IMG/VR virus record: IMGVR_UViG_3300028676_000003
Location: 248,001 to 312,000 of that record
Direction: 5' to 3' (one strand)
DNA length: 64,000 nt
Part shown: positions 737 to 55,356 of the stretch, one piece after another
Position numbering within the stretch: the first letter of the stretch is position 1
How the letters are laid out: every line of letters starts with the position of its first letter
Made by a program: the position numbers and the translations under genes
Notes under the pieces: model-generated
Told to the model about the DNA's origin: nothing
What the model saw: the letters and a program-made list of their open reading frames with translations, nothing else
The model's database searches: none

Positions 737-1861
737 ATGTTAGCAATACAAGAATATATCAAAAAACACGGAATAAATAAGGCAATTTCAGACTTTAATC
801 TAAAATCTAGAGAGTATGAAAACAAAATCTTATTGAAATACGACCAATTATCATCACCAACAATGATGGCAATGGCTGAAATGCAAGATTCTCGTGGTAT
901 TATCCTTGAAAAAGGAACTTGGAAGGTCTTATCACTTGCATTTAGAAAGTTCTTCAACTCAGAAGAAGGAAATGCACATAAAATTGATTGGAATACTGCC
1001 CGTGTACTAGAGAAACTAGATGGTACCCTTATACAATTGTATTGGGATGCACATAAAGGTAAGTGGTTTGCAGGTACTACAGGTACAGCAGAAGGTGAGG
1101 GTGAAGTGAATAATAAAAATGGTACTACATTTAATGACCTTTTTTTCCAAACAGTTGCTGAAAAATACAACTTGGATTTAAACAGACTTGATAAAAAATA
1201 CTGTTTTGTGTTCGAATTAACAACACCTTATAATATAGTAGTGAAGCCACACGGTGAATCATCTGCTACGTTATTAACTATTAGAAACCTTGAGACACTT
1301 GAAGAAGTTTGTTATGAAGAATTACTAAACCACGGTTCAGTATTAGGACTTCCAGTAGTTAAATCATTTGACCTTAATGCTAAGAACGTTGGAGCTTTGC
1401 TTCGTACATTCGAAAACATGCCATGGTCAGAAGAAGGTTATGTTGTTGTTGATGGAAACAATGATAGAATCAAGTGTAAAAACCCAGCTTATGTTGCGGT
1501 TCACCACTTAAAAGGTAAGTCAGCAGAACACAATATCATCACGATTGTTAAATCAAACGAGATTGAAGAATTTGGTTCTACTTTCCCTGAAAGAAAAGAA
1601 GAATTGTACAAGCTTAAGGCTAACTACGATATCCTTTTAGAAAAATTACTTGTAACTTGGGAAGAATTGAAATTACGTAAACCTAAGAATATCATGCCAG
1701 CCGAAAAGAAAAAATATGCGGCCGCTGTATTCGAAGTTTGCGAGAAACATGACTTAAAGCCATTTACAGGTTTATTCTTTGGACTAAACGATGGAAAGGT
1801 AGAAAGTGTTGAAAGCTTCCTTATGAACTACGACGATAAACTCTTATACAAGATGTTATGA
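737..1861 (+). CDS. RNA ligase, T4 Rnl1-like
   Basis: Motifs KFFN, EKLDGTLI (motif I), FELTTPYN.IV, EGYVV and RIKCKNPAY; preceded by a TACCTTTGT promoter at 709. Confidence 0.85.
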   Translation: MLAIQEYIKKHGINKAISDFNLKSREYENKILLKYDQLSSPTMMAMAEMQDSRGIILEKGTWKVLSLAFRKFFNSEEGNAHKIDWNTARVLEKLDGTLIQLYWDAHKGKWFAGTTGTAEGEGEVNNKNGTTFNDLFFQTVAEKYNLDLNRLDKKYCFVFELTTPYNIVVKPHGESSATLLTIRNLETLEEVCYEELLNHGSVLGLPVVKSFDLNAKNVGALLRTFENMPWSEEGYVVVDGNNDRIKCKNPAYVAVHHLKGKSAEHNIITIVKSNEIEEFGSTFPERKEELYKLKANYDILLEKLLVTWEELKLRKPKNIMPAEKKKYAAAVFEVCEKHDLKPFTGLFFGLNDGKVESVESFLMNYDDKLLYKML

Positions 1862-2798: not shown

Positions 2799-3004
2799 TC
2801 AAATATTAGTTGTACATTTGTACTCTAATTTAAAAACAAGTATTATGGCAGGTGAAATAATCGGAGAAATATTAGTTGGTGCAATTGAACTAGCGGCAGA
2901 AATCGCAATAGATGAAAAGAAGCCAGGATGTGGATGCGCAATTATCATTGCCTTGCTATTAATACTAGGTTTTGGAATTTATTACTTTAACTAAAAACAA
3001 AAAT

Positions 3005-4429
3005 ATGAAAATTAAACAAATTCTTGATGAAATCGCTGGTTTCAGTGGTAAATTGGATAAAGCGAAAGCCTTAACCAAATATAAAGACAATCAATTATTA
3101 AAAGATGTGATTTATCTTGCGCATTCGCCTAGGATTAAATTCTTTATTAAACAAATACCTGAGTATCAGTTCATCGAAGCAACAACTTCACTTGAAGACG
3201 CTTTAAATGACTTAAAACAAATCTCCGACAGATTTTACACAGGTGCGGCCGCTACAGAATTCCTTTTAGGTTTACTATCTTATACGGACCCTGATGATGC
3301 TTACGTAATTGAACGTATCATTGATAAAAATCTTAAGATAGGAATGGACACAGGTATCAATAAGGTAATCCCTAAATTGATTGAAGAAACTCCTTATCAA
3401 GGTGCTACATCATTCTCAGAGAAGGGTGCATCTAAGTTATTAGATAGAAAATCTAGAACTGATAAAAATGGAGTTACAAGTCATGTGATTTCACAGATTA
3501 AAGCTGATGGTTCTTACCGTAATGCAATCATAATTGATGGAAAGGTAGAACTCTTATCAAGACAAGGAGAAGTTTCAACTCTTACAGGTGCCAAGTTCTT
3601 AGATGAACTAGCTCAAATGCCTGACTGTGTTCTAAATGGTGAACTTACTGTTGATGGAATAGAAAACCGTGCAATTGCAAACGGAGTTGTTTCTAGCATC
3701 ATGGATATCACTCAGAAAGCAGAAGAAAGAGGTGAAGTAGAAACAGCTAAGAAAATCAAAGCCTTTACTGAAAAACACGGTGATATGGCAGAAATGATTA
3801 ATAGGTTACGCTTCACGGTTTGGGATATGATTAGTGTAGATGAATACTTAAAAGCAAGTTCAGATTTTCCATATTTGAACCGTTTTACTGGTCTTCAAAC
3901 ACTTTTGATTGAAAAAGCTTTCACAAATATTGAATTGATTGAAACTCTTTTTATTGACTCTTATGAAGAAGCAATGAATCATTTCTTAGACGCTCAAAAA
4001 AGAGGTCTTGAAGGAACAATCATCAAATCAAGTACTGCTGGTTGGAAAGATGGGAAACCAACTTACCAAATCAAAATGAAACTTGAAATGGATATGGACT
4101 TAAGAATCATCGGATTCAACTATGGTACCAAAGGTACTAAGAATGAGCATGTTATTAGTGTTCTACAGTTGGAAAGTGAAGATGGGTTATTGAAGACTAA
4201 TCCTGGTGGAATGACTGAGGCTATGATGGCTGATATCACTGAAAGACAAGATGAACTAATGGGAACAATCGTTCAAATTAGATGTTGCGGGTTATCTCAA
4301 ACAGATAAAGGTTGGTCAACACAACACCCAAGTATTGTTGAACTAAGAACAGATAAAGACTCTTGTGACACACTTGAATCTTGTATCGCTATTGAGAATA
4401 TGGCAAAAACACTAAACGTAAAAAAATAA
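3005..4429 (+). CDS. ATP-dependent DNA ligase (T4 gp30-like)
   Basis: QIKADG (motif I), LNGEL, FTVWD, EGTIIK and IKMK, with a C-terminal OB fold ending HP....R.DK. ATG at 3005 chosen over the upstream TTG. Confidence 0.9.
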   Translation: MKIKQILDEIAGFSGKLDKAKALTKYKDNQLLKDVIYLAHSPRIKFFIKQIPEYQFIEATTSLEDALNDLKQISDRFYTGAAATEFLLGLLSYTDPDDAYVIERIIDKNLKIGMDTGINKVIPKLIEETPYQGATSFSEKGASKLLDRKSRTDKNGVTSHVISQIKADGSYRNAIIIDGKVELLSRQGEVSTLTGAKFLDELAQMPDCVLNGELTVDGIENRAIANGVVSSIMDITQKAEERGEVETAKKIKAFTEKHGDMAEMINRLRFTVWDMISVDEYLKASSDFPYLNRFTGLQTLLIEKAFTNIELIETLFIDSYEEAMNHFLDAQKRGLEGTIIKSSTAGWKDGKPTYQIKMKLEMDMDLRIIGFNYGTKGTKNEHVISVLQLESEDGLLKTNPGGMTEAMMADITERQDELMGTIVQIRCCGLSQTDKGWSTQHPSIVELRTDKDSCDTLESCIAIENMAKTLNVKK

Positions 4430-5825: not shown

Positions 5826-6872
5826 ATGAAGAAAATGATTAAATTTCCGTCTATCGAGCAGTTTCGTACAATTAACGCAACTATCCTTAGACAATTCAAT
5901 TTCGTCGGTTTAGACGAAACGGGAGAAGCTATCTACGATACAAACCTCCCAAAACCAAAGCTTTGGTTCAAAGGTAGTGTAAAATTACATGGTACAAATG
6001 CCGCTGTTTGTTACAATACCGCAGGTGGTTTATGGGCACAATCACGTGAAAGCATAATCACAGTTGAAAATGATAATGCAGGGTTCGCATTCTTTGTGGA
6101 AAGTAACAAAGACGCATTCAACCAATTATTCCGTAAAATTCAAGACGAAACAAGTGTTAGTTTTGAACATAATACGGTAAGTATCTATGGTGAGTGGTGC
6201 GGTGGAAACATCCAAAAAGGTGTTGCGATTACAAACTTGCCTAAGTCATTTTTCATCTTTGGTGTGAAAATCTCACCAATTCGTACAAAAGAGCAAGAAG
6301 AAGATAACAAAGAAGTATCATTTTGGGTAGAGTCAAACTATTTAGAGGTTCCTGAAAATAGAATCTACAATGTTGACAGTTTCCAAACATATGCTATTGA
6401 AATCGACTTCAATAACCCTCAATTAGTACAAGACAAATTAACTGAATTAACACTTGCTGTAGAAGCAGAGTGTCCGATTGGAAAAGCTTTCGGATTCTCA
6501 GGTGTTGGTGAAGGTATTGTTTGGAAAACGGAATTGGATGGAGAGGTCCATAGATTCAAAGTTAAGGGTGATAAACACTCTAGTTCTAAGAGCGAGAAGA
6601 TTGTTAGTATTGACGTTGAAAAATTGGAATCAATCCAAAAATTCATCGAATATGCTGTAACAGAAAGTCGCTTCAAACAAGGTCTTGAAAATGTATTCCC
6701 AAATGAAGAACCTATCGAAATCAAAAAGATGGGTGAACTTATCAAATGGGTAGTTAATGACGTTATCAAAGAAGAGACCGACACAATGGTAGCTAACAAT
6801 ATCGAACCAAAAGAGGTTAATAAATACATCTCTACAAGGGTACGTGAAATGTTCATGGCACTAAGTGTTTAA
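5826..6872 (+). CDS. RNA ligase, Rnl2 family
   Basis: Motifs KFPSIEQF, VKLHGTNA, IYGEWCG, GEGIVW and FKVKG. Confidence 0.85.
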   Translation: MKKMIKFPSIEQFRTINATILRQFNFVGLDETGEAIYDTNLPKPKLWFKGSVKLHGTNAAVCYNTAGGLWAQSRESIITVENDNAGFAFFVESNKDAFNQLFRKIQDETSVSFEHNTVSIYGEWCGGNIQKGVAITNLPKSFFIFGVKISPIRTKEQEEDNKEVSFWVESNYLEVPENRIYNVDSFQTYAIEIDFNNPQLVQDKLTELTLAVEAECPIGKAFGFSGVGEGIVWKTELDGEVHRFKVKGDKHSSSKSEKIVSIDVEKLESIQKFIEYAVTESRFKQGLENVFPNEEPIEIKKMGELIKWVVNDVIKEETDTMVANNIEPKEVNKYISTRVREMFMALSV

Positions 6873-6939: not shown

Positions 6940-8292
6940 ATGAATTCAAAATTATTTATTGCCGACAAAATTAAGGTCGGATTTAACCCAAGACCTGATA
7001 CTTATACTGGTTTACTAGGGTATGTTATAGGGTTTGATGGTAAGAAATGGCGTAAAGAACCTTCGTGGGAAGGTTGGCGATATAAATATGTAACTGACGA
7101 AGATTATGAATCTCAGAAGTTGGATGAATATAATAGAGCTACAGCCAATGCTACTCAAAGCTATAACCACATTTTAGCGCAAAAGGCGATTGACTATAAG
7201 GGTTGTTCACAATGGAGCATTGACCAATACAAGAAAGATGCCGCATTAACTCTAGAACAATACATTCTTCAACGTATTGGTACTTATGATGAGTATGAAA
7301 AGAGCTTTAAGAATATTTCATCAAATAGAAAAAATTCTATGGATGAAAACATCAAACCAAAAGAATTTGAAAACGTTCCAACAGAAGGTTTCGTTCTTAA
7401 CAAAAAGGTTGGTGGTTATTCTAATGGTTGGGACCACAGGTCAACTTATTGTAGAGTTTATGACCCTCGTGGGTTCGAATTCGAGATAAATGTACCAAAT
7501 CTTCTTTATATCCTTGAGCAATGTAACTCTATGAAAGGTAAAGGACTTGAAGGTGAATTTGTTTACGCTTGGGATGGGAAAGACTTGGTATTATTACCAA
7601 CTTCTAGTCAAGAGTACGTTTCATCAGCTAAGTTTACCAAGTTACAATCAGGTAAGGTATCTTCAAAAGAATTGGTTGCTGGTAATACTTACAAGACAAA
7701 ATCAATGGATGATTATATCTATTTAGGTAGATTTAACCACTTCAACAACAAAAGACACTATTGGAGAGACAAGTCTAAGGATTGTAAAAAATCTCACGTA
7801 TTTGTAAGCGTTGATAACCCTAAGAATTTCTATGCGGTTACTTCTTTGACTAATTTTGTTCAAATTGTAAGTGATGTTCCAATTTCAAATTATGCTGAGT
7901 TATATGATAACTTCATTGCATCTGATGAATACTACGATATTGAAACTCGTTTTGAAACAGAAATGGAAATTGAAACAAACCCTGATAAAGCAGGTCATTT
8001 CGGTGATTTCTATGTTAAGATTAGCGATAATCAATACAAGATGTACGAAGGTGGAGCGAATGTTGATTGGGTAGGTGGTTCAACTTACTATACAAGAGAC
8101 AGAAAACGAACAATTACTGGGTATTACACTCAATATAAGGGTATATTAACCTTTAAAGGTAATGGTGAATTTACTATTAAAAAAGTAAGTGAAGACATGA
8201 AAAATAAATTGACTCTTGGTGATGTAAAAGCACTAAATCCACTTTATTTAGAGGTTAAAACAAATAACGGAAATCAAAAAATAAATTTTTAA
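6940..8292 (+). CDS. hypothetical phage protein
   Basis: 450-aa ORF with no motif I recognise. Confidence 0.7.
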   Translation: MNSKLFIADKIKVGFNPRPDTYTGLLGYVIGFDGKKWRKEPSWEGWRYKYVTDEDYESQKLDEYNRATANATQSYNHILAQKAIDYKGCSQWSIDQYKKDAALTLEQYILQRIGTYDEYEKSFKNISSNRKNSMDENIKPKEFENVPTEGFVLNKKVGGYSNGWDHRSTYCRVYDPRGFEFEINVPNLLYILEQCNSMKGKGLEGEFVYAWDGKDLVLLPTSSQEYVSSAKFTKLQSGKVSSKELVAGNTYKTKSMDDYIYLGRFNHFNNKRHYWRDKSKDCKKSHVFVSVDNPKNFYAVTSLTNFVQIVSDVPISNYAELYDNFIASDEYYDIETRFETEMEIETNPDKAGHFGDFYVKISDNQYKMYEGGANVDWVGGSTYYTRDRKRTITGYYTQYKGILTFKGNGEFTIKKVSEDMKNKLTLGDVKALNPLYLEVKTNNGNQKINF

Positions 8293-8997: not shown

Positions 8998-10284
8998 ATG
9001 ATAACAAACGAGAATGGTTTAAGATATGCTAAATTGATGCACGTTTCAGTTGATAACGGTCATACAGATAATAGCAATAAAGTTTATATCATGGAAGAAC
9101 TTTCCAATGGTACAATCAAATGTGAATACGGTAGAGTCGGTAATTCGATGGCCGTAGATATCAAACCCGCAAGCAAATGGGATGCAACCTATAAGCAGAA
9201 AACAAGCAAAACGAAGGGTTACACTGATGTAACTGAGTTTATGGCTGAACCTGTTGTAGATGCCGCTAAACCTTCAGGTAACAACCTGATTGATGATATT
9301 CCTGATGCTCTTGTTAAAGAACTTATTAAACGTTTAAGCGACTTCGCAAACAAATCGATTCAACAAAACTATAAGGTAACTCAAGATGCAGTATCTGAGG
9401 CCCAAGTAGTTGCGGCTCAAGCTTTATTAACTAGAATTACAACAACAGTTGCAGTTGGAGTTAGTAAAAATGACTTGAATGAAATGCTTATGCAATTATA
9501 TACGATAATCCCTCGTAACATGAGAAATGTTAAGGATTATTTGTTAGATGAAATCAAAACTGCCGATGATGTAAATCAAGCATTAGAGTTCTTGAATAAA
9601 GAACAAGCTACTCTTGATACAATGGCTGGTCAAGTTGATTTAATAAAGAAACAGAAGCCTGTAGTTGATACTGAAACCAAAGAAGTGAAACCATCAACAT
9701 ATACTATTCTTGACCAAATGGGTATTACAGCTGAGGTTGTAAATGATGCTCCAACTATCAAGATGGTAAGAGATATGCTTGAAGGACATGGTAGAAAACT
9801 TCACAGAGTCTACGCAATTACCAATAAGAAATCACAACCGCTTTACGATACCAAATTGGATTCAAGCAAAAACAAATTGGTTGAACACTTGTTCCACGGT
9901 TCAAGAAATGCCAATTGGTTTAACATTCTTCAAACTGGTCTTATGATTAGACCTTCGGGAGCTGGTTATAATGGTTCTATGTTTGATGATGGTATCTACT
10001 TCGCTAACGATGCAGATAAATCAATGGGTTACACCGATGGTGGTCGTTGGGCAGGTGGTGGAAACGCAAGTTACACTTACTTAGGTGTATTTAGCGTTCA
10101 CTTAGGAAACCAATTACACGTTCATAGACATGATTCTTCATGTTACAAAATTGGAACCAAGTGTAGAAACGAGGGTTATGATTCGGTTTATGCTCACAAA
10201 GGAGCTTCACTTAGAAAAGATGAGTTAATTATTTATAATTCTGCTCAGTGTACTGTTAAATATTTAGTAGAACTTAAAAATTAA
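8998..10284 (+). CDS. PARP-family ADP-ribosyltransferase (WGR + regulatory + catalytic domains)
   Basis: N-terminal NKVY...EYGRVG...KGY (WGR), LYTIIP (regulatory), then LFHGSR..N...IL..GL, GSMFDDGIYFA....KS.GY and DELIIY (H-Y-E triad). Confidence 0.9.
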   Translation: MITNENGLRYAKLMHVSVDNGHTDNSNKVYIMEELSNGTIKCEYGRVGNSMAVDIKPASKWDATYKQKTSKTKGYTDVTEFMAEPVVDAAKPSGNNLIDDIPDALVKELIKRLSDFANKSIQQNYKVTQDAVSEAQVVAAQALLTRITTTVAVGVSKNDLNEMLMQLYTIIPRNMRNVKDYLLDEIKTADDVNQALEFLNKEQATLDTMAGQVDLIKKQKPVVDTETKEVKPSTYTILDQMGITAEVVNDAPTIKMVRDMLEGHGRKLHRVYAITNKKSQPLYDTKLDSSKNKLVEHLFHGSRNANWFNILQTGLMIRPSGAGYNGSMFDDGIYFANDADKSMGYTDGGRWAGGGNASYTYLGVFSVHLGNQLHVHRHDSSCYKIGTKCRNEGYDSVYAHKGASLRKDELIIYNSAQCTVKYLVELKN

Positions 10285-23428: not shown

Positions 23429-23507
23429 AAGATAGTTTCAGCAAGCAAACGGTTAAAAATTTGTCTCATAAACAAACTGAGTGGTTCAATCCCACAAAAC
23501 TATCTTG
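23429..23507 (+). ncRNA. CAGCAA-stem element (skipping-rope-like) enclosing a Met(CAT) anticodon arm and a T arm
   Basis: AAGATAGTT.CAGCAA ... TTTGT-CTCATAA-ACAAA, GTGG-TTCAATC-CCAC ... AACTATCTT-G. Confidence 0.6.
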
Positions 23508-31362: not shown

Positions 31363-31364
31363 CA

Positions 31365-31420
31365 AGAGACTGTTACTAATTTATAGGACTCCGAGTGAGG
31401 GGAAGCGTAGAATTAGAATT
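31365..31420 (+). repeat. inter-tRNA motif, copy 1 (AGACTGTT..TAATTYATAG...GCGTAGAATTA)
   Basis: Further copies at 52482-52545 and 52826-52881. Confidence 0.75.
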
Positions 31421-31423
31421 TTT

Positions 31424-38529: not shown

Positions 38530-38589
38530 TCGTTGACAAAAAGAAAGGTCGTCTAAATCGTAATTGGTTTAGACACCACAAGGTATAAA

Positions 38590-38722
38590 AAAATTCGTTC
38601 AGCATAAAAAGCAATTCCAAACTTCGGGTCGTAGGTTCGAGTCCTACCCTCTCCACTAGGGTTATAATCGGAGAGGTAGCTCGGTCGGATTAGAGCAGAA
38701 GTCAGCAAAAAAAGCAATTTTG
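38590..38722 (+). ncRNA. circularly permuted tRNA (3' half precedes 5' half) flanked by 18-nt direct repeats
   Basis: 3' half ACTTC-GGGTC-GTAGG-TTCGAGT-CCTAC-CCTCTCC-A (38621-38655), 14-nt linker, 5' half GGAGAGG-TA-GCTC...GAGC-A-GAAGT (38670-38702). Confidence 0.75.
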
Positions 38723-38731
38723 ATACCCCAT

Positions 38732-38850
38732 ATAGTAGTCGTCTAGTGGACAAAGACACCGCCCCTGTATTCGTGTATGAGGTTCGACTCCTCTTTAGCA
38801 GTGGTGGTATGACGTAGGTGGAAACATTGGTTCAAATCCAATCTGCTGTA
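38732..38850 (+). ncRNA. Glu/Asp-type tRNA body with an ~50-nt insertion in the anticodon loop
   Basis: ATAGTAG/CTGCTGT, D arm GTCTAGTGGACAAAGAC; the CCGCC/GGTGG stem encloses a second T-arm (GAGG-TTCGACT-CCTC). Confidence 0.6.
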
Positions 38851-38884
38851 CAAAAGGTTCCTCTTGCCTTACAAGAGAATAAAA

Positions 38885-39013
38885 AAGATTATTTCAGCAA
38901 TCAAACAAAAAAAATCTATTTGAAAGAGAGCGGAGGGGTTCGACTCCCCATTTGTCTATAAGAGGTATGACAATTTGTTGTAACGGTAGCACTAATAAAA
39001 AAAATTAATCTTG
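38885..39013 (+). ncRNA. CAGCAA-stem element enclosing a permuted Gln(TTG)-like tRNA
   Basis: AAGATTA...CAGCAA, anticodon arm, GGGG-TTCGACT-CCCC, TTGTC-linker-GACAA, D arm TTGTAACGGTAGCA, closing TAATCTT-G. Confidence 0.6.
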
Positions 39014-39023
39014 ATTCTCACAT

Positions 39024-51387: not shown

Positions 51388-51458
51388 GCCCTCTAAGCTT
51401 TAAGGTGAAGCACGATACTTTTAATATCGGGAAAATGGTCCAATACCATTAGGGGGTA
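51388..51458 (+). tRNA. tRNA-Lys(TTT)
   Basis: CGATA-CTTTTAA-TATCG; divergent T loop. Confidence 0.75.
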
Positions 51459-51477
51459 CAAGTTTTAATAAACGAAT

Positions 51478-51550
51478 GCCCTCGAAACATTGCTGGCGAT
51501 GTACTCCGCTTTTAACGGAGGAATAATTGGTTCGATTCCAATCGGGGGTA
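51478..51550 (+). tRNA. tRNA-Lys(TTT)
   Basis: CTCCG-CTTTTAA-CGGAG. Confidence 0.85.
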
Positions 51551-51569
51551 CAAGACGAAAGTCGAATAC

Positions 51570-51644
51570 TCTCCTATGGCTGACTGGGTAAAGCACCATA
51601 CTTTTAATATGGCATCAATGTCGGTTCGAACCCGACTGGGAGAA
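51570..51644 (+). tRNA. tRNA-Lys(TTT)
   Basis: CCATA-CTTTTAA-TATGG. Confidence 0.85.
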
Positions 51645-51706
51645 CAAATTAAGTTTTTAACCTTTACTTTTGTTTAAAAGCGCATATTATTGTAATAAAA
51701 TTTATT

Positions 51707-52476: not shown

Positions 52477-52481
52477 CGAGA

Positions 52482-52545
52482 AGAGACTGTTATTAATTCA
52501 TAGAACACCATACTTAGTAAGTACTGGAAGCGTAGAATTAAAAAT
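52482..52545 (+). repeat. inter-tRNA motif, copy 2
   Basis: AGAGACTGTTATTAATTCATAG...GAAGCGTAGAATTAA. Confidence 0.75.
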
Positions 52546-52547
52546 TA

Positions 52548-52817: not shown

Positions 52818-52825
52818 CGAAGATA

Positions 52826-52881
52826 AGACTGTTGCTAATTCATAGGGTACCAAGGTAAAAACTGCGTAGAATTAGAAAATT
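52826..52881 (+). repeat. inter-tRNA motif, copy 3
   Basis: AAGACTGTTGCTAATTCATAG...TGCGTAGAATTAG. Confidence 0.75.
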
Positions 52882-53116: not shown

Positions 53117-53188
53117 TGTCAAGTAGTTTAATTGAGAAAACTCCCTGCGTTGGGCGGGGCGATTTGGGTTTGAATCCCGATTTGACAG
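53117..53188 (+). tRNA. Gln-like tRNA with an atypical anticodon loop (CGTTGGG)
   Basis: TGTCAAG/TTTGACA-G; CCCTG-CGTTGGG-CGGGG. Confidence 0.55.
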
Positions 53189-53197
53189 CAAAGATAA

Positions 53198-53257
53198 AAA
53201 ATGATTTCAGCAAATATTATCATCAAACTTTTAATTTGAAACAGATATATCATTTTG
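53198..53257 (+). ncRNA. CAGCAA-stem element enclosing a Lys(TTT) anticodon arm
   Basis: AAAATGAT..CAGCAA ... TCAAA-CTTTTAA-TTTGA ... ATCATTTT-G. Confidence 0.6.
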
Positions 53258-53265
53258 TTCTTTTT

Positions 53266-53344
53266 GGGTCTATGGCAGAGCGGTCGATTGCGACAGACTG
53301 TAAATCTGTTATTCCACACCGTGGTTCGAATCCACGTGGGCCCA
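53266..53344 (+). tRNA. tRNA-Tyr(GTA)
   Basis: ACAGA-CTGTAAA-TCTGT. Confidence 0.9.
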
Positions 53345-53404
53345 CTGGCGAGTATGTTGTTTTATGATTTTCAGGAAAAGGCGTTAGAGAAAAAAATCAA
53401 ATTT

Positions 53405-53486
53405 GGGGTATCGCCAAAGTAGGAGAGTTGGGACGGTCTGTAACACCGTTGCGAAAGCTGAGTAGGTTCGATTCCTACATGCCTCA
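53405..53486 (+). tRNA. tRNA-Tyr(GTA)
   Basis: ACGGT-CTGTAAC-ACCGT with a variable arm. Confidence 0.85.
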
Positions 53487-53549
53487 CTGAGCAGTTGTGG
53501 TCTGCTTGCAATTAAATTCCACCGTTTGATTCACGTAACGAATCACTAT

Positions 53550-55224: not shown

Positions 55225-55345
55225 GGGGGTATTAAAATATTGGCAAACGGCATTCTGCAATTTAAAAAAGAATGATTACTGCAAAATTCAAAAAAACAAT
55301 CTGTAACATTGAAATTAATACGTGGTTCGATTCCCGTTGCCCCCA
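55225..55345 (+). ncRNA. Tyr(GTA)-like tRNA interrupted between the D and anticodon arms by a CTGCAA-stem element with its arms in reversed order
   Basis: GGGGGTA/TGCCCCC-A acceptor; insert CATTCTG...AGAATG.TTACTGCAA; CAAT-CTGTAAC-ATTG; T loop TTCGATT. Confidence 0.6.
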
Positions 55346-55356
55346 CAAAACTTTTT

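What the first reader, a model, noticed from the sequence alone, without database searches (positions are those of the whole stretch)
53198..53257. CAGCAA-stem element displaying only a Lys(TTT) anticodon arm
The loop CTTTTAA is identical to that of the three real tRNA-Lys genes, on a perfect 5-bp stem. tRNA-Lys(UUU) is the established target of PrrC and of PARIS AriB, so a stand-alone arm is a plausible decoy (inference).
Basis: partly seen in the sequence, partly recalled or inferred. Interest (0 to 1): 0.6.

Follow-up and report, generated by a model that had tools for sequence, protein, structure and literature searches.

The report
Phage mini-RNA displaying a lysine anticodon arm
The flagged 60 bases are a real, conserved small-RNA gene in a giant phage's tRNA array; it shows only the lysine tRNA anticodon arm on a fixed scaffold and belongs to a widespread, apparently undescribed phage RNA family that may mimic tRNAs to blunt host tRNA-cutting defences.

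Summary
Positions 53223-53239 form a perfect 5-bp stem with loop CTTTTAA, identical to the loops of the three real tRNA-Lys genes. This arm sits inside an 8-bp outer stem (53198-53205 with 53249-53256).

It is not a canonical tRNA: the Rfam tRNA model and ARAGORN in bacterial mode both miss it. Its fold is no more stable than shuffled sequence. Comparative evidence shows it is not chance:
- Relatives whose tail sheath is about 71% identical carry it in the same slot, between tRNA-Gln and tRNA-Tyr.
- Seven of the eight outer-stem pairs show compensatory changes.
- TTCAGCAA and the UUU loop are retained.

It belongs to a family built from an outer stem, CAGCAA, an A-rich linker and a cargo. The family is found in well over 100 uncultured viral contigs. 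It is also present, unannotated, in cultured phages (GAP32, CBB, XaC1, XbC2, Kaldavass, fHe-Yen9-04, KVP40). It is essentially absent from 185,579 prokaryote genomes.

Cargo is usually a 5-bp stem with a canonical 7-nt anticodon loop. Lys is commonest, followed by Thr and Arg. Larger relatives carry a T arm or a permuted, YrlA-like tRNA domain.

The decoy function is plausible but untested. The phage encodes two RNA ligases and three tRNA-Lys genes, and Lys and Thr are the prime targets of the PARIS nuclease AriB.

The parts
53117..53189 (+). Upstream neighbour: tRNA-Gln(UUG), third of three tandem copies. The element starts 8 nt after it.
   Evidence: ARAGORN. Not listed among the 37 Rfam gathering-threshold matches.
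53198..53205 (+). Outer stem, 5' strand (AAAATGAT), in an acceptor-like position
   Evidence: Pairs with 53249-53256. In alignment A1, 7 of 8 pairs show compensatory double changes and 97.8% of cells are paired.
53206..53213 (+). Invariant TTCAGCAA motif (core CAGCAA at 53208-53213), the family's 'handle'
   Evidence: The motif was fixed by the retrieval patterns for A1 and most of A2, so its invariance there is not independent. In members recovered by similarity search and the covariance model (cultured phages) the CAGCAA core is kept while the two preceding bases vary. The motif is also shared with the window's siblings at 23437 and 38893.
53214..53222 (+). 5' linker (A/U/C-rich, G-poor); occupies the place of a D arm
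   Evidence: Length is 8-14 nt across the family. G is rare: 21 of 578 linker bases.
53223..53239 (+). Anticodon-arm mimic: 5-bp stem TCAAA/TTTGA and 7-nt loop CTTTTAA. The anticodon-like TTT lies at 53230-53232.
   Evidence: In the wider family 4 of 5 stem pairs covary with the loop kept.
53240..53248 (+). 3' linker (A-rich); replaces the variable region and T arm
   Evidence: Length is 5-13 nt across the family.
53249..53256 (+). Outer stem, 3' strand (ATCATTTT)
53257..53257 (+). Conserved G immediately after the outer stem, followed by a U-rich trailer
   Evidence: G is the first base after the stem in 54 of 55 distinct members.
53266..53345 (+). Downstream neighbour: tRNA-Tyr(GUA), 8 nt after the element
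   Evidence: In most of the close relatives the element lies 6-9 nt upstream of tRNA-Tyr.
23429..23507 (+). Sibling in the Val to Leu(AAG) spacer: 10-bp outer stem, TTCAGCAA, arm TTTGT-CTCATAA-ACAAA (Met-type loop) and a T arm (GTGG-TTCAATC-CCAC); no D stem
   Evidence: Scores 34.8 bits with model R1 and 17 bits with Rfam tRNA. Orthologues carry other anticodon loops (CTTAAAA, CTGCAAA) and covaried T stems.
38586..38730 (+). Sibling with a related 5' module (outer stem plus TCAGCA) enclosing a circularly permuted tRNA-like domain (T arm, closed acceptor, D arm)
   Evidence: Rfam YrlA 29.3 bits against a gathering score of 69. Sequence. The same architecture occurs at L099:10417-10553.
38884..39018 (+). 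Second larger sibling (AAGATTA stem, TTCAGCAA, TCAAA-13 nt-TTTGA, T-arm-like hairpin); boundaries approximate
   Evidence: Scores only 15.9 bits with R1.
51388..51645 (+). Context: three tandem, diverged full-length tRNA-Lys(UUU) genes with the same loop
737..1861 (+). Context: T4 Rnl1-type RNA ligase gene
   Evidence: PF09511, 49.6-50.3 bits, above the cut-off
5826..6872 (+). Context: Rnl2-type RNA ligase gene
   Evidence: PF09414, 49.8 bits

Best explanation
Positions 53198-53257 are a gene for a tRNA-like mini-RNA of about 60 nt. It is embedded, like a tRNA, in the phage's polycistronic tRNA array. It has three parts: an acceptor-like 7-8-bp stem, the invariant single-stranded motif UUCAGCAA with A-rich linkers in place of the D and T arms, and a canonical tRNA-Lys(UUU) anticodon stem-loop.

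It belongs to a phage-specific modular family in which the same handle (stem plus CAGCAA) carries different tRNA parts. That this is a conserved structured RNA is shown; I put it at about 0.95.

The proposed mechanism is inferred; I put it at about 0.35-0.4. The RNA would be cut out of the array transcript with the tRNAs. It cannot serve in translation because it lacks an elbow. It would act as a molecular mimic of the tRNA-Lys anticodon arm, occupying a host factor that recognises that arm. The most plausible target is an anticodon nuclease of an anti-phage defence (PrrC/RloC-type, PARIS AriB-type or similar). This would spare the full-length tRNA-Lys pool, working alongside the phage's own three tRNA-Lys genes and its RNA ligases.
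For: Structure and conservation:
- The orthologue in relative G002 lies in the same Gln to Tyr spacer, with a completely different but complementary outer stem and the same motif, arm stem and UUU loop.
- 17 distinct sequences give 97.8% pairing and 7 of 8 outer-stem pairs with double changes. No shuffle out of 500 reaches the covariation score.
- The outer stem was not part of the retrieval pattern.
- 38 further distinct members show all 8 outer pairs and 4 of 5 arm pairs covarying.
- U-G wobble pairs occur only on the tRNA strand.

tRNA-like placement:
- Members sit 3-7 nt after one tRNA and 6-13 nt before the next.

Loops:
- Loops are canonical anticodon loops (Y-U-NNN-R-N) of many identities on a constant scaffold.
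- In the loop-agnostic scan 37 of about 63 true members are Lys or Thr.
- In the cargo-agnostic handle scan Lys is the commonest loop, 11 of 46.

Distribution:
- Phage-specific: one true hit in 185,579 prokaryote species.
- Also present in cultured phages.

Expression:
- A peat metatranscriptome contig matches 53186-53409 with no differences.

Arms-race context:
- Rnl1- and Rnl2-type ligases and three tRNA-Lys(UUU) genes.
- AriB's prime targets are Lys(UUU) and Thr(UGU). Its U36AAU39 motif is present here, without the C40/A41 cleavage pair.
Against: - There is no evidence of binding to or inhibition of any nuclease, and the host and its defences are unknown.
- The arm stem (UCAAA/UUUGA) is a scaffold feature shared by Lys, Thr and Arg members and does not copy any known host tRNA-Lys stem. 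AriB also needs D-loop contacts, which this RNA lacks.
- A stoichiometric decoy would need to be very abundant, and abundance is unknown.
- The same handle carries YrlA-like cargo with no anticodon arm, so the handle's partner may define the function instead.
- The RNA-library contig has low depth and DNA carry-over is not excluded.
- The fold is not thermodynamically special.
Confidence: 0.4

Rival explanations
1. Y-RNA-like adaptor. The stem plus CAGCAA handle binds a dedicated protein, as the 5' motif of YrlA is thought to bind Rsr/Ro60. The tRNA-like cargo, here an anticodon arm, tethers that protein to tRNA-recognising enzymes or to tRNA-processing or repair machinery. The RNA would then be a scaffold or regulator rather than a competitive decoy.
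For: The same handle encloses circularly permuted tRNA-like domains that hit Rfam YrlA at 29-32 bits. CAGCAA occupies the place of YrlA's 5' Rsr-binding motif, and D. radiodurans Yrn1 has an anticodon-like arm (PMC4201824). The CAGCAA core and the 3' G are the most conserved positions.
Against: The genome has no TROVE/Ro60 gene. The motif differs from GNCGAAN0-1G. The YrlA scores are far below the gathering score, and the element itself has no YrlA hit. No candidate handle-binding protein was identified.
Confidence: 0.2
2. Processing or folding element of the polycistronic tRNA precursor. A tRNA-shaped spacer would give RNase P, RNase Z or RNase E defined entry sites, or insulate the folding of neighbouring tRNAs (notably tRNA-Tyr), with no function after excision.
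For: The element occupies a tRNA slot with tRNA-like short spacers, and in most of the close relatives it lies 6-9 nt upstream of tRNA-Tyr. tRNA genes here lack encoded CCA, and the phage encodes a CCA-adding-type enzyme. A second conserved spacer family exists in the same arrays.
Against: A punctuation role does not explain why the inner loop is held to canonical 7-nt anticodon loops with U33 and a purine at 37 while its stem covaries. It also does not explain the near-invariant CAGCAA. In other phages the element precedes many different tRNAs or none.
Confidence: 0.15
3. Mimic that titrates a housekeeping factor binding the anticodon arm (LysRS anticodon-binding domain, t6A37 or mnm5s2U34 modification enzymes, or the ribosomal decoding site). 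This would re-programme host translation rather than counter a defence nuclease.
For: Canonical anticodon-loop geometry is conserved. Many displayed anticodons (Lys UUU, Thr UGU, Arg UCU, Ile GAU, Asn, Met) read ANN codons and carry the U36-A37 context of t6A substrates. The link to t6A is my own knowledge.
Against: Loops for Glu, Ser(UGA), Tyr, Phe and Leu also occur. There is no evidence of modification or aminoacylation. The phage's own tRNA-Lys would be affected as well.
Confidence: 0.1
4. Extremely reduced but functional tRNA-Lys (armless, like nematode mitochondrial tRNAs) that is CCA-tailed, charged and used in translation or in a non-ribosomal aminoacyl transfer.
For: It has an acceptor-like stem of 7-8 bp, one conserved base after the stem and a canonical anticodon arm. 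ARAGORN in mitochondrial mode calls it mtRNA-Lys(ttt) at 53193-53260. The phage encodes a CCA-adding-type enzyme.
Against: ARAGORN's mitochondrial mode makes about 100 extra calls in this genome. Bacterial EF-Tu and ribosomes need the T arm and elbow (established knowledge). The arm stem is the same for different anticodons, so it carries no identity elements. Three normal tRNA-Lys genes are present.
Confidence: 0.05
5. Decayed tRNA-Lys pseudogene or chance hairpin in an AT-rich spacer, with no function.
For: The spacer is 76 nt, the length of a tRNA. The fold z-score is -0.95. About 0.3 such hairpins are expected by chance genome-wide. tRNA fragments do occur in these arrays.
Against: Compensatory changes occur in 7-8 of 8 outer pairs. 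The motif is invariant and the loop retained across phages whose sheath proteins are only about 70% identical, and in unrelated cultured phages.
Confidence: 0.02

Closest known systems
YrlA / bacterial Y RNA-like tRNA mimics (Rfam RF02553; Chen et al. 2014, PMC4201824)
   Same: Both are small RNAs whose 5' and 3' ends form a stem, followed on the 5' side by a short conserved single-stranded motif. Both have a body built from tRNA parts, and both are found in phages. Larger siblings with the same handle hit the YrlA model over its tRNA-like domain.
   Different: The element has no T or D arm, only an anticodon arm, which YrlA lacks. The motif is CAGCAA, not GNCGAAN0-1G. There is no adjacent or genomic Ro60/TROVE gene. 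Scores are far below the gathering threshold, and the element itself has no hit.
Armless or truncated mitochondrial tRNAs of nematodes and mites (e.g. Romanomermis culicivorax; PMC6158502, seen only in a title list)
   Same: Both have an acceptor stem and anticodon arm joined by two single-stranded connectors, with no D or T arm. ARAGORN's mitochondrial mode calls the element mtRNA-Lys.
   Different: Those are bona fide adaptors with a co-evolved mitochondrial translation machinery. Here the connectors are longer and carry an invariant motif, the arm stem is shared among different anticodons, and full-length tRNAs of the same anticodon usually sit in the same array.
Stable RNAs of unknown function in phage tRNA clusters: T4 rnaC/rnaD (species 1 and 2), T5 RNA I/III
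   Same: They are non-tRNA small RNAs encoded inside phage tRNA gene clusters and released with the tRNAs (annotations).
   Different: Model R1 finds no family member in T4 or T5 (best E about 0.3). Those RNAs are 106-139 nt and are not known to display an anticodon arm.
Phage tRNAs as counter-defence (T5 tRNA-Lys/Thr/Asn against PARIS AriB; phage tRNA-Tyr against retron effectors; anticodon-loop variants in mycobacteriophages: PMC11464382, PMC12409363, PMC11555353, PMC10264068)
   Same: Both are phage-encoded RNAs from tRNA arrays that concern the same tRNA species (Lys, Thr and others) attacked by host nucleases.
   Different: Those are full-length, nuclease-resistant tRNAs that replace the cleaved host tRNA in translation. 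This RNA cannot plausibly decode and would have to act by mimicry or titration.

Membership tests
Canonical tRNA (RF00005) | Cloverleaf with D arm and T arm (GTTCRANNC loop) scoring above the covariance-model threshold | tested here: not met
   No tRNA hit on the spacer even at E<=10 in a 151-nt search. ARAGORN in bacterial mode makes no call even with lowered thresholds. No T-loop motif or D stem is present in 53198-53257.
Canonical tRNA (RF00005) | 7-bp acceptor stem and 5-bp anticodon stem with a 7-nt loop (U33, purine 37) | tested here: met
   Outer stem of 8 bp, and arm TCAAA-CTTTTAA-TTTGA.
Armless or truncated (mitochondrial-type) tRNA | Acceptor stem and anticodon arm joined by replacement loops | tested here: met
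   ARAGORN -mt calls mtRNA-Lys(ttt) at 53193-53260. The same mode gives about 100 additional calls in this genome, so the call alone is weak.
Armless or truncated (mitochondrial-type) tRNA | CCA addition, aminoacylation and use in translation | not testable with these tools
   Needs RNA end mapping and charging assays.
YrlA / Y RNA-like (RF02553) | tRNA-like domain with T and D arms and a closed acceptor-like stem | tested here: not met
   Absent from 53198-53257. Present in siblings at 38586-38730 and L099:10417-10553, at 29-32 bits against a gathering score of 69.
YrlA / Y RNA-like (RF02553) | 5' Rsr-binding motif GNCGAAN0-1G and a Ro60/TROVE gene nearby | tested here: not met
   The motif here is UUCAGCAA. 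The 368,549-bp genome has no PF05731 match. A host-encoded Ro60 cannot be checked because the host is unknown.
CAGCAA-handle mini-RNA family (defined here, model R1) | Covarying 7-8-bp outer stem, NNCAGCAA, G-poor linker, inner 5-bp stem with a 7-nt loop, A-rich linker, then G after the stem; located in a phage tRNA array on the tRNA strand | tested here: met
   76 bits with R1, although the window sequence is one of the 17 the model was built from. Independent members score 37-65 bits. Structure counts are, and context.
Anticodon-nuclease decoy (functional class) | Binds or is cleaved by a tRNA-Lys-directed nuclease and protects cellular tRNA-Lys | not testable with these tools
   Only circumstantial: the U36AAU39 motif is present, and the phage encodes RNA ligases.

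The most novel reading that the evidence does not exclude
Large tailed phages carry a modular RNA platform. A constant protein- or enzyme-binding handle (stem plus CAGCAA) presents interchangeable tRNA parts. The mini members are RNA anti-defence decoys, each displaying the anticodon arm of the tRNA species that a host anticodon nuclease attacks (Lys, Thr, Arg, Tyr and others). This would be a non-coding counterpart of protein anti-defence sponges, evolving by swapping 7-nt loops.
Probability: 0.3. Interest if true: 0.9.

Novelty: new variant of a known kind. Interest (0 to 1): 0.8.

Why it matters
Phage tRNA arrays are now seen as counter-measures to tRNA-cleaving immunity, but only full-length tRNAs have been considered. 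This work shows that the "spacers" of such arrays hold a conserved, structured and apparently undescribed RNA family, in uncultured giant phages and in cultured ones (GAP32, CBB, fHe-Yen9-04, XaC1, XbC2, Kaldavass, KVP40). The family presents bare anticodon arms on a fixed scaffold.

If these RNAs are decoys or adaptors, they add an RNA-based layer to the tRNA arms race. They would give a sequence-readable indicator, the displayed anticodon, of which tRNAs are under attack in a given host. Because members exist in culturable systems, the question can be tested directly. The family also links mini tRNA mimics to Y-RNA-like molecules through a shared handle.

Tried and rejected
- Rfam at gathering score over the whole window and at E<=10 over 53150-53300 gave only chance snoRNA-type matches.
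- ARAGORN in bacterial mode with lowered thresholds made no call.
- Thermodynamic stability is not significant: z = -0.95. RNAalifold recovers only the outer stem because the A-U arm is weak.
- The promoter and terminator scan found nothing at the element.
- Megablast and blastn of the array against isolated phages found only generic tRNA similarity.
- Neighbour-gene searches returned the same phage (L001-L003, 100% identical) and a 43%-identical relative without any tRNAs.
- A possible third helix between the two linkers is weak. The best helix is 3.2 bp against 2.5 bp in shuffles, so I do not claim it.
- The highly expressed ncRNAs of phage PA5oct (PMC7318152) are not family members.
- T4, T5 and RaK2 have no member.
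- The genome has no TROVE/Ro60 gene and no RtcB.
- A full-length tRNA of the same anticodon co-occurs in 30 of 42 larger loci, but I had no proper control, so this is not used as evidence.
- Five literature searches found no description of the family. Absence from this library does not prove that it is unpublished.

Full report
**Setting**

The window is bases 248001-312000 of a 368,549-bp virus record with 34% G+C and genes almost all on one strand. A 100%-identical IMG/VR contig exists, and public peat metagenomes hold the sequence. ARAGORN finds 62 tRNA genes in the genome and 40 in the window, arranged in arrays interrupted by HNH and GIY-YIG homing-endonuclease genes. The tail sheath is only 31-40% identical to any isolated phage, so this is an uncultured jumbo myovirus lineage.

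**Observation**

The finding lies in the 76-nt spacer between the third tRNA-Gln(UUG) (53117-53189) and the first tRNA-Tyr (53266-53345).
- The sequence shows TCAAA-CTTTTAA-TTTGA at 53223-53239, a perfect 5-bp stem.
- Its 7-nt loop is identical to the anticodon loops of all three tRNA-Lys(UUU) genes at 51388-51645.
- TTCAGCAA (53206-53213) follows the outer stem's 5' strand. CAGCAA is therefore beside the stem, not in it.

**Is it more than chance?**

Within this genome alone, only weakly.
- CTTTTAA occurs 208 times. Five copies have perfect 5-bp flanks: the three tRNAs, this element, and one on the minus strand.
- From base composition I expect about 0.3 chance cases.
- The predicted fold is no more stable than shuffles (z = -0.95).
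- The Rfam tRNA model does not see it even at E<=10, and ARAGORN in bacterial mode does not call it.
- ARAGORN's mitochondrial mode calls an mtRNA-Lys, but that mode makes about 100 extra calls in this genome.

A first hint of non-randomness came from a broader count. Six perfect hairpins outside tRNAs on the plus strand carry a loop identical to some real tRNA loop. Three of them lie in the roughly 7 kb of array spacers. Three spacer elements also share the 9-mer TTTCAGCAA after an AAAGAT-type start.

**Conservation**

A relative whose tail sheath is 71% identical (IMGVR_UViG_3300032268_000832) has syntenic arrays. In the same Gln to Tyr spacer it carries an element with these features:
- the same TTCAGCAA;
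- the same arm stem;
- a UUU loop (TTTTTAC);
- an outer stem of entirely different but complementary sequence.

A pattern that fixed only the motif and the arm found 27 viral stretches, giving 17 distinct sequences. In their alignment (A1) the outer stem was not part of the pattern. It is 97.8% paired, and 7 of its 8 pairs show changes on both sides. None of 500 shuffles reaches the covariation score, and sliding the partner strand collapses pairing to 35-47%. U-G wobbles are frequent on the tRNA strand, which points to an RNA read in the tRNA direction. In most of these phages the element sits 6-9 nt upstream of tRNA-Tyr, and in several only 3 nt after tRNA-Gln. That is the spacing of a tRNA gene in the array.

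**A family**

A covariance model (R1) and two further scans show that this is one member of a large family.
- Loop-agnostic scan. The motif and arm stem were fixed and the loop left free. It gave 71 hits with an outer stem, about 63 after removing obvious chance matches. The loops are canonical anticodon loops: Lys-type 25, CTTGTAA (Thr) 12, CTTCTAC (Arg UCU) 7, CTGATAA (Ile) 4, Glu 3, Ser 3, Tyr 2, and others.
- R1 search. On those loci R1 recovered 59 members, 38 of them distinct. The arm stem also covaries (UUUGA/UCAAA, UUCAA/UUGAA, ACAAA/UUUGU) while the loop is kept. All 8 outer pairs and 4 of 5 arm pairs show double changes (this alignment is fitted to the model).
- Handle-only scan. Of these, 98 have a closing strand followed by G. 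Cargo lengths fall into three classes: 64 short (50 nt or less), 21 medium and 13 long. Twelve of the medium class contain a GTTCRA T-loop motif. Several medium and long cargos have D-arm-like motifs, and some are permuted tRNA-like domains. Among short cargos with a detectable hairpin, CTTTTAA is the commonest loop (11 of 46), on at least five different stems.

**Distribution**

The family is unannotated but present in cultured phages:
- Xanthomonas phage XaC1: two tandem Lys-type copies and a third scaffold.
- Cronobacter phage GAP32: loop CUUUUAC.
- Pectobacterium phage CBB: same scaffold, loop changed to CCUAACC.
- Xanthomonas phage XbC2.
- Erwinia phage Kaldavass.
- Yersinia phage fHe-Yen9-04: loop CUUUUAA.
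- Vibrio phage KVP40: scaffold kept, with a U-rich non-canonical loop.

R1 finds none in T4, T5, RaK2 or PA5oct. A scan of one genome from each of 185,579 prokaryote species found three matches. Only one has the scaffold, and it lies on a 641-nt MAG contig beside three tRNAs. The family is therefore phage-specific.

**Anatomy (consensus)**

- 5' flank, A- or U-rich.
- 7-8-bp outer stem, usually starting A-G-G/A.
- NNCAGCAA, with the CAGCAA core nearly invariant.
- 8-14-nt linker with almost no G.
- 5-bp stem with a 7-nt loop, U at position 33 and A at position 37 in nearly all.
- 5-13-nt A-rich linker.
- Outer stem 3' strand.
- G, in 54 of 55 distinct members, then U-rich sequence.

**Siblings in this window**

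- 23429-23507 has the handle, a Met-type arm and a T arm but no D stem. Its orthologues keep the T arm through compensatory changes but display other anticodon loops.
- 38586-38730 and about 38884-39018 have the handle around a circularly permuted tRNA-like domain. The first hits Rfam YrlA at 29.3 bits, below the gathering score of 69. A clearer example is L099:10417-10553.
- The genome has no Ro60/TROVE gene.

**Expression**

One peat metatranscriptome run holds a 227-nt contig identical to 53186-53409. That span covers the mini-RNA, tRNA-Tyr and the next spacer. It is the only exact piece of the 2.3-kb stretch found in that run. This fits a processing intermediate, but the depth is low and DNA carry-over cannot be excluded.

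**How it most likely works**

Shown: this is a conserved, structured, tRNA-strand element occupying a tRNA slot and displaying a canonical tRNA-Lys anticodon arm.

Inferred:
- It is transcribed and excised with the tRNAs.
- It cannot act on the ribosome via EF-Tu because it lacks a T arm and elbow (established knowledge).
- It works by mimicry of the anticodon arm.

I favour titration or inhibition of an anticodon nuclease, for four reasons:
1. The loop is held to anticodon-loop rules while both stems drift.
2. Lys and Thr dominate. [quoted passage not shown] The element has U36AAU39 followed by U40U41, so the motif is retained and the cleavage dinucleotide is not.
3. The phage encodes Rnl1- and Rnl2-type RNA ligases. 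T4 Rnl1 is the classic repair enzyme for PrrC-cut tRNA-Lys (my own knowledge).
4. The phage keeps three diverged tRNA-Lys(UUU) genes.

Against this:
- No nuclease or host is known here.
- AriB also reads the D loop.
- The arm stem is a scaffold, not a host copy.
- The handle also carries cargo without an anticodon.

The rivals are a Y-RNA-like adaptor, a processing element, titration of housekeeping enzymes, a minimal functional tRNA, and a pseudogene. They are scored in the Rival explanations section.

**Comparison and novelty**

The element works like a tRNA mimic. It fails the membership tests for a canonical tRNA and for YrlA. It resembles armless mitochondrial tRNAs only in outline. It is unrelated by model R1 to the T4 and T5 stable RNAs. 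No Rfam family matches it, and none of five full-text searches turned up a description. I rate it a new variant of a known kind (tRNA-like non-coding RNA). It has a realistic chance of representing a new functional class.

Noticed in passing
window 31364-31423, 52478-52547, 52819-52881: A second conserved spacer-RNA family. The copies share GAGACTGTT..TAATTCATAG and GCGTAGAATTAGAA around a variable apical hairpin. The same motif occurs in relatives (L090:14709, L095:1255, L100:480). Function unknown.
   Followed up: partly
window 38586-38730 and about 38884-39018: Y-RNA-like (YrlA-type) circularly permuted tRNA-like modules with the same CAGCA(A) handle. The first scores 29.3 bits with Rfam YrlA and also gives weak permuted-tmRNA hits. 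The genome has no Ro60/TROVE gene.
   Followed up: partly
window 38732-38850: A tRNA covariance-model hit (36.7 bits) with a 51-nt insertion at the anticodon-loop position. It could be an intron-containing or composite tRNA.
   Followed up: no
window 20790-54525 (all arrays): Isoacceptors occur as tandem, sequence-diverged duplicates or triplicates: Lys x3, Gln x3 plus 1, Tyr x2, Thr x2, Pro x2, Gly x2, Phe x3, Glu x3. Several have unusual anticodon loops (6- or 8-nt loops, CGTTGGG, CGTGGAG) or A34 anticodons (AAG, ACC, ATG). This recalls the anticodon-loop variants described as a way of evading nucleases.
   Followed up: no
window 737-1861, 2298-2798, 2972-4429, 5826-6872, 8998-10284: A cluster of nucleic-acid repair-type genes: Rnl1-type RNA ligase, HD-domain protein, ATP-dependent DNA ligase, Rnl2-type RNA ligase and a PARP-like ADP-ribosyltransferase. 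Homologues of 6940-8292 are annotated as RNase Z or metal-dependent hydrolase in Bacillus phages.
   Followed up: partly
window 53488-53549: The Tyr to Thr spacer holds two perfect hairpins: AGCAG-TTGTGGT-CTGCT, whose loop is identical to that of a tRNA-His of this genome, and TGATTC-ACGTAAC-GAATCA. Neither has a CAGCAA handle.
   Followed up: no
window 55265-55350: A weak family-like hit (23.7 bits) with TACTGCAA, arm CAAT-CTGTAAC-ATTG (Tyr-type loop) and a degenerate T arm. It sits inside a possible 119-nt tRNA-like unit just after the GIY-YIG gene.
   Followed up: partly
genome G000:225233-225301 (outside the window; L008:1233-1301): Another family member (43.4 bits), immediately after a tRNA-Met. 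Its motif is TACAGCAA, and its inner hairpin is not a canonical anticodon loop.
   Followed up: partly
genome G000:228804-228879 (outside the window); L090:2866-2941 in the relative: A tRNA with a CUA (amber-reading) anticodon in this phage, and a tRNA with a UCA anticodon in the relative. I did not test for stop-codon reassignment and assumed no alternative code.
   Followed up: no
Pectobacterium phage CBB (L217:619-688) compared with Cronobacter phage GAP32 (L214:1488-1557): The two elements are 88.5% identical overall, yet four of the seven loop bases differ (CUUUUAC against CCUAACC) while the stems and handle are kept. Change is concentrated in the displayed loop.
   Followed up: no
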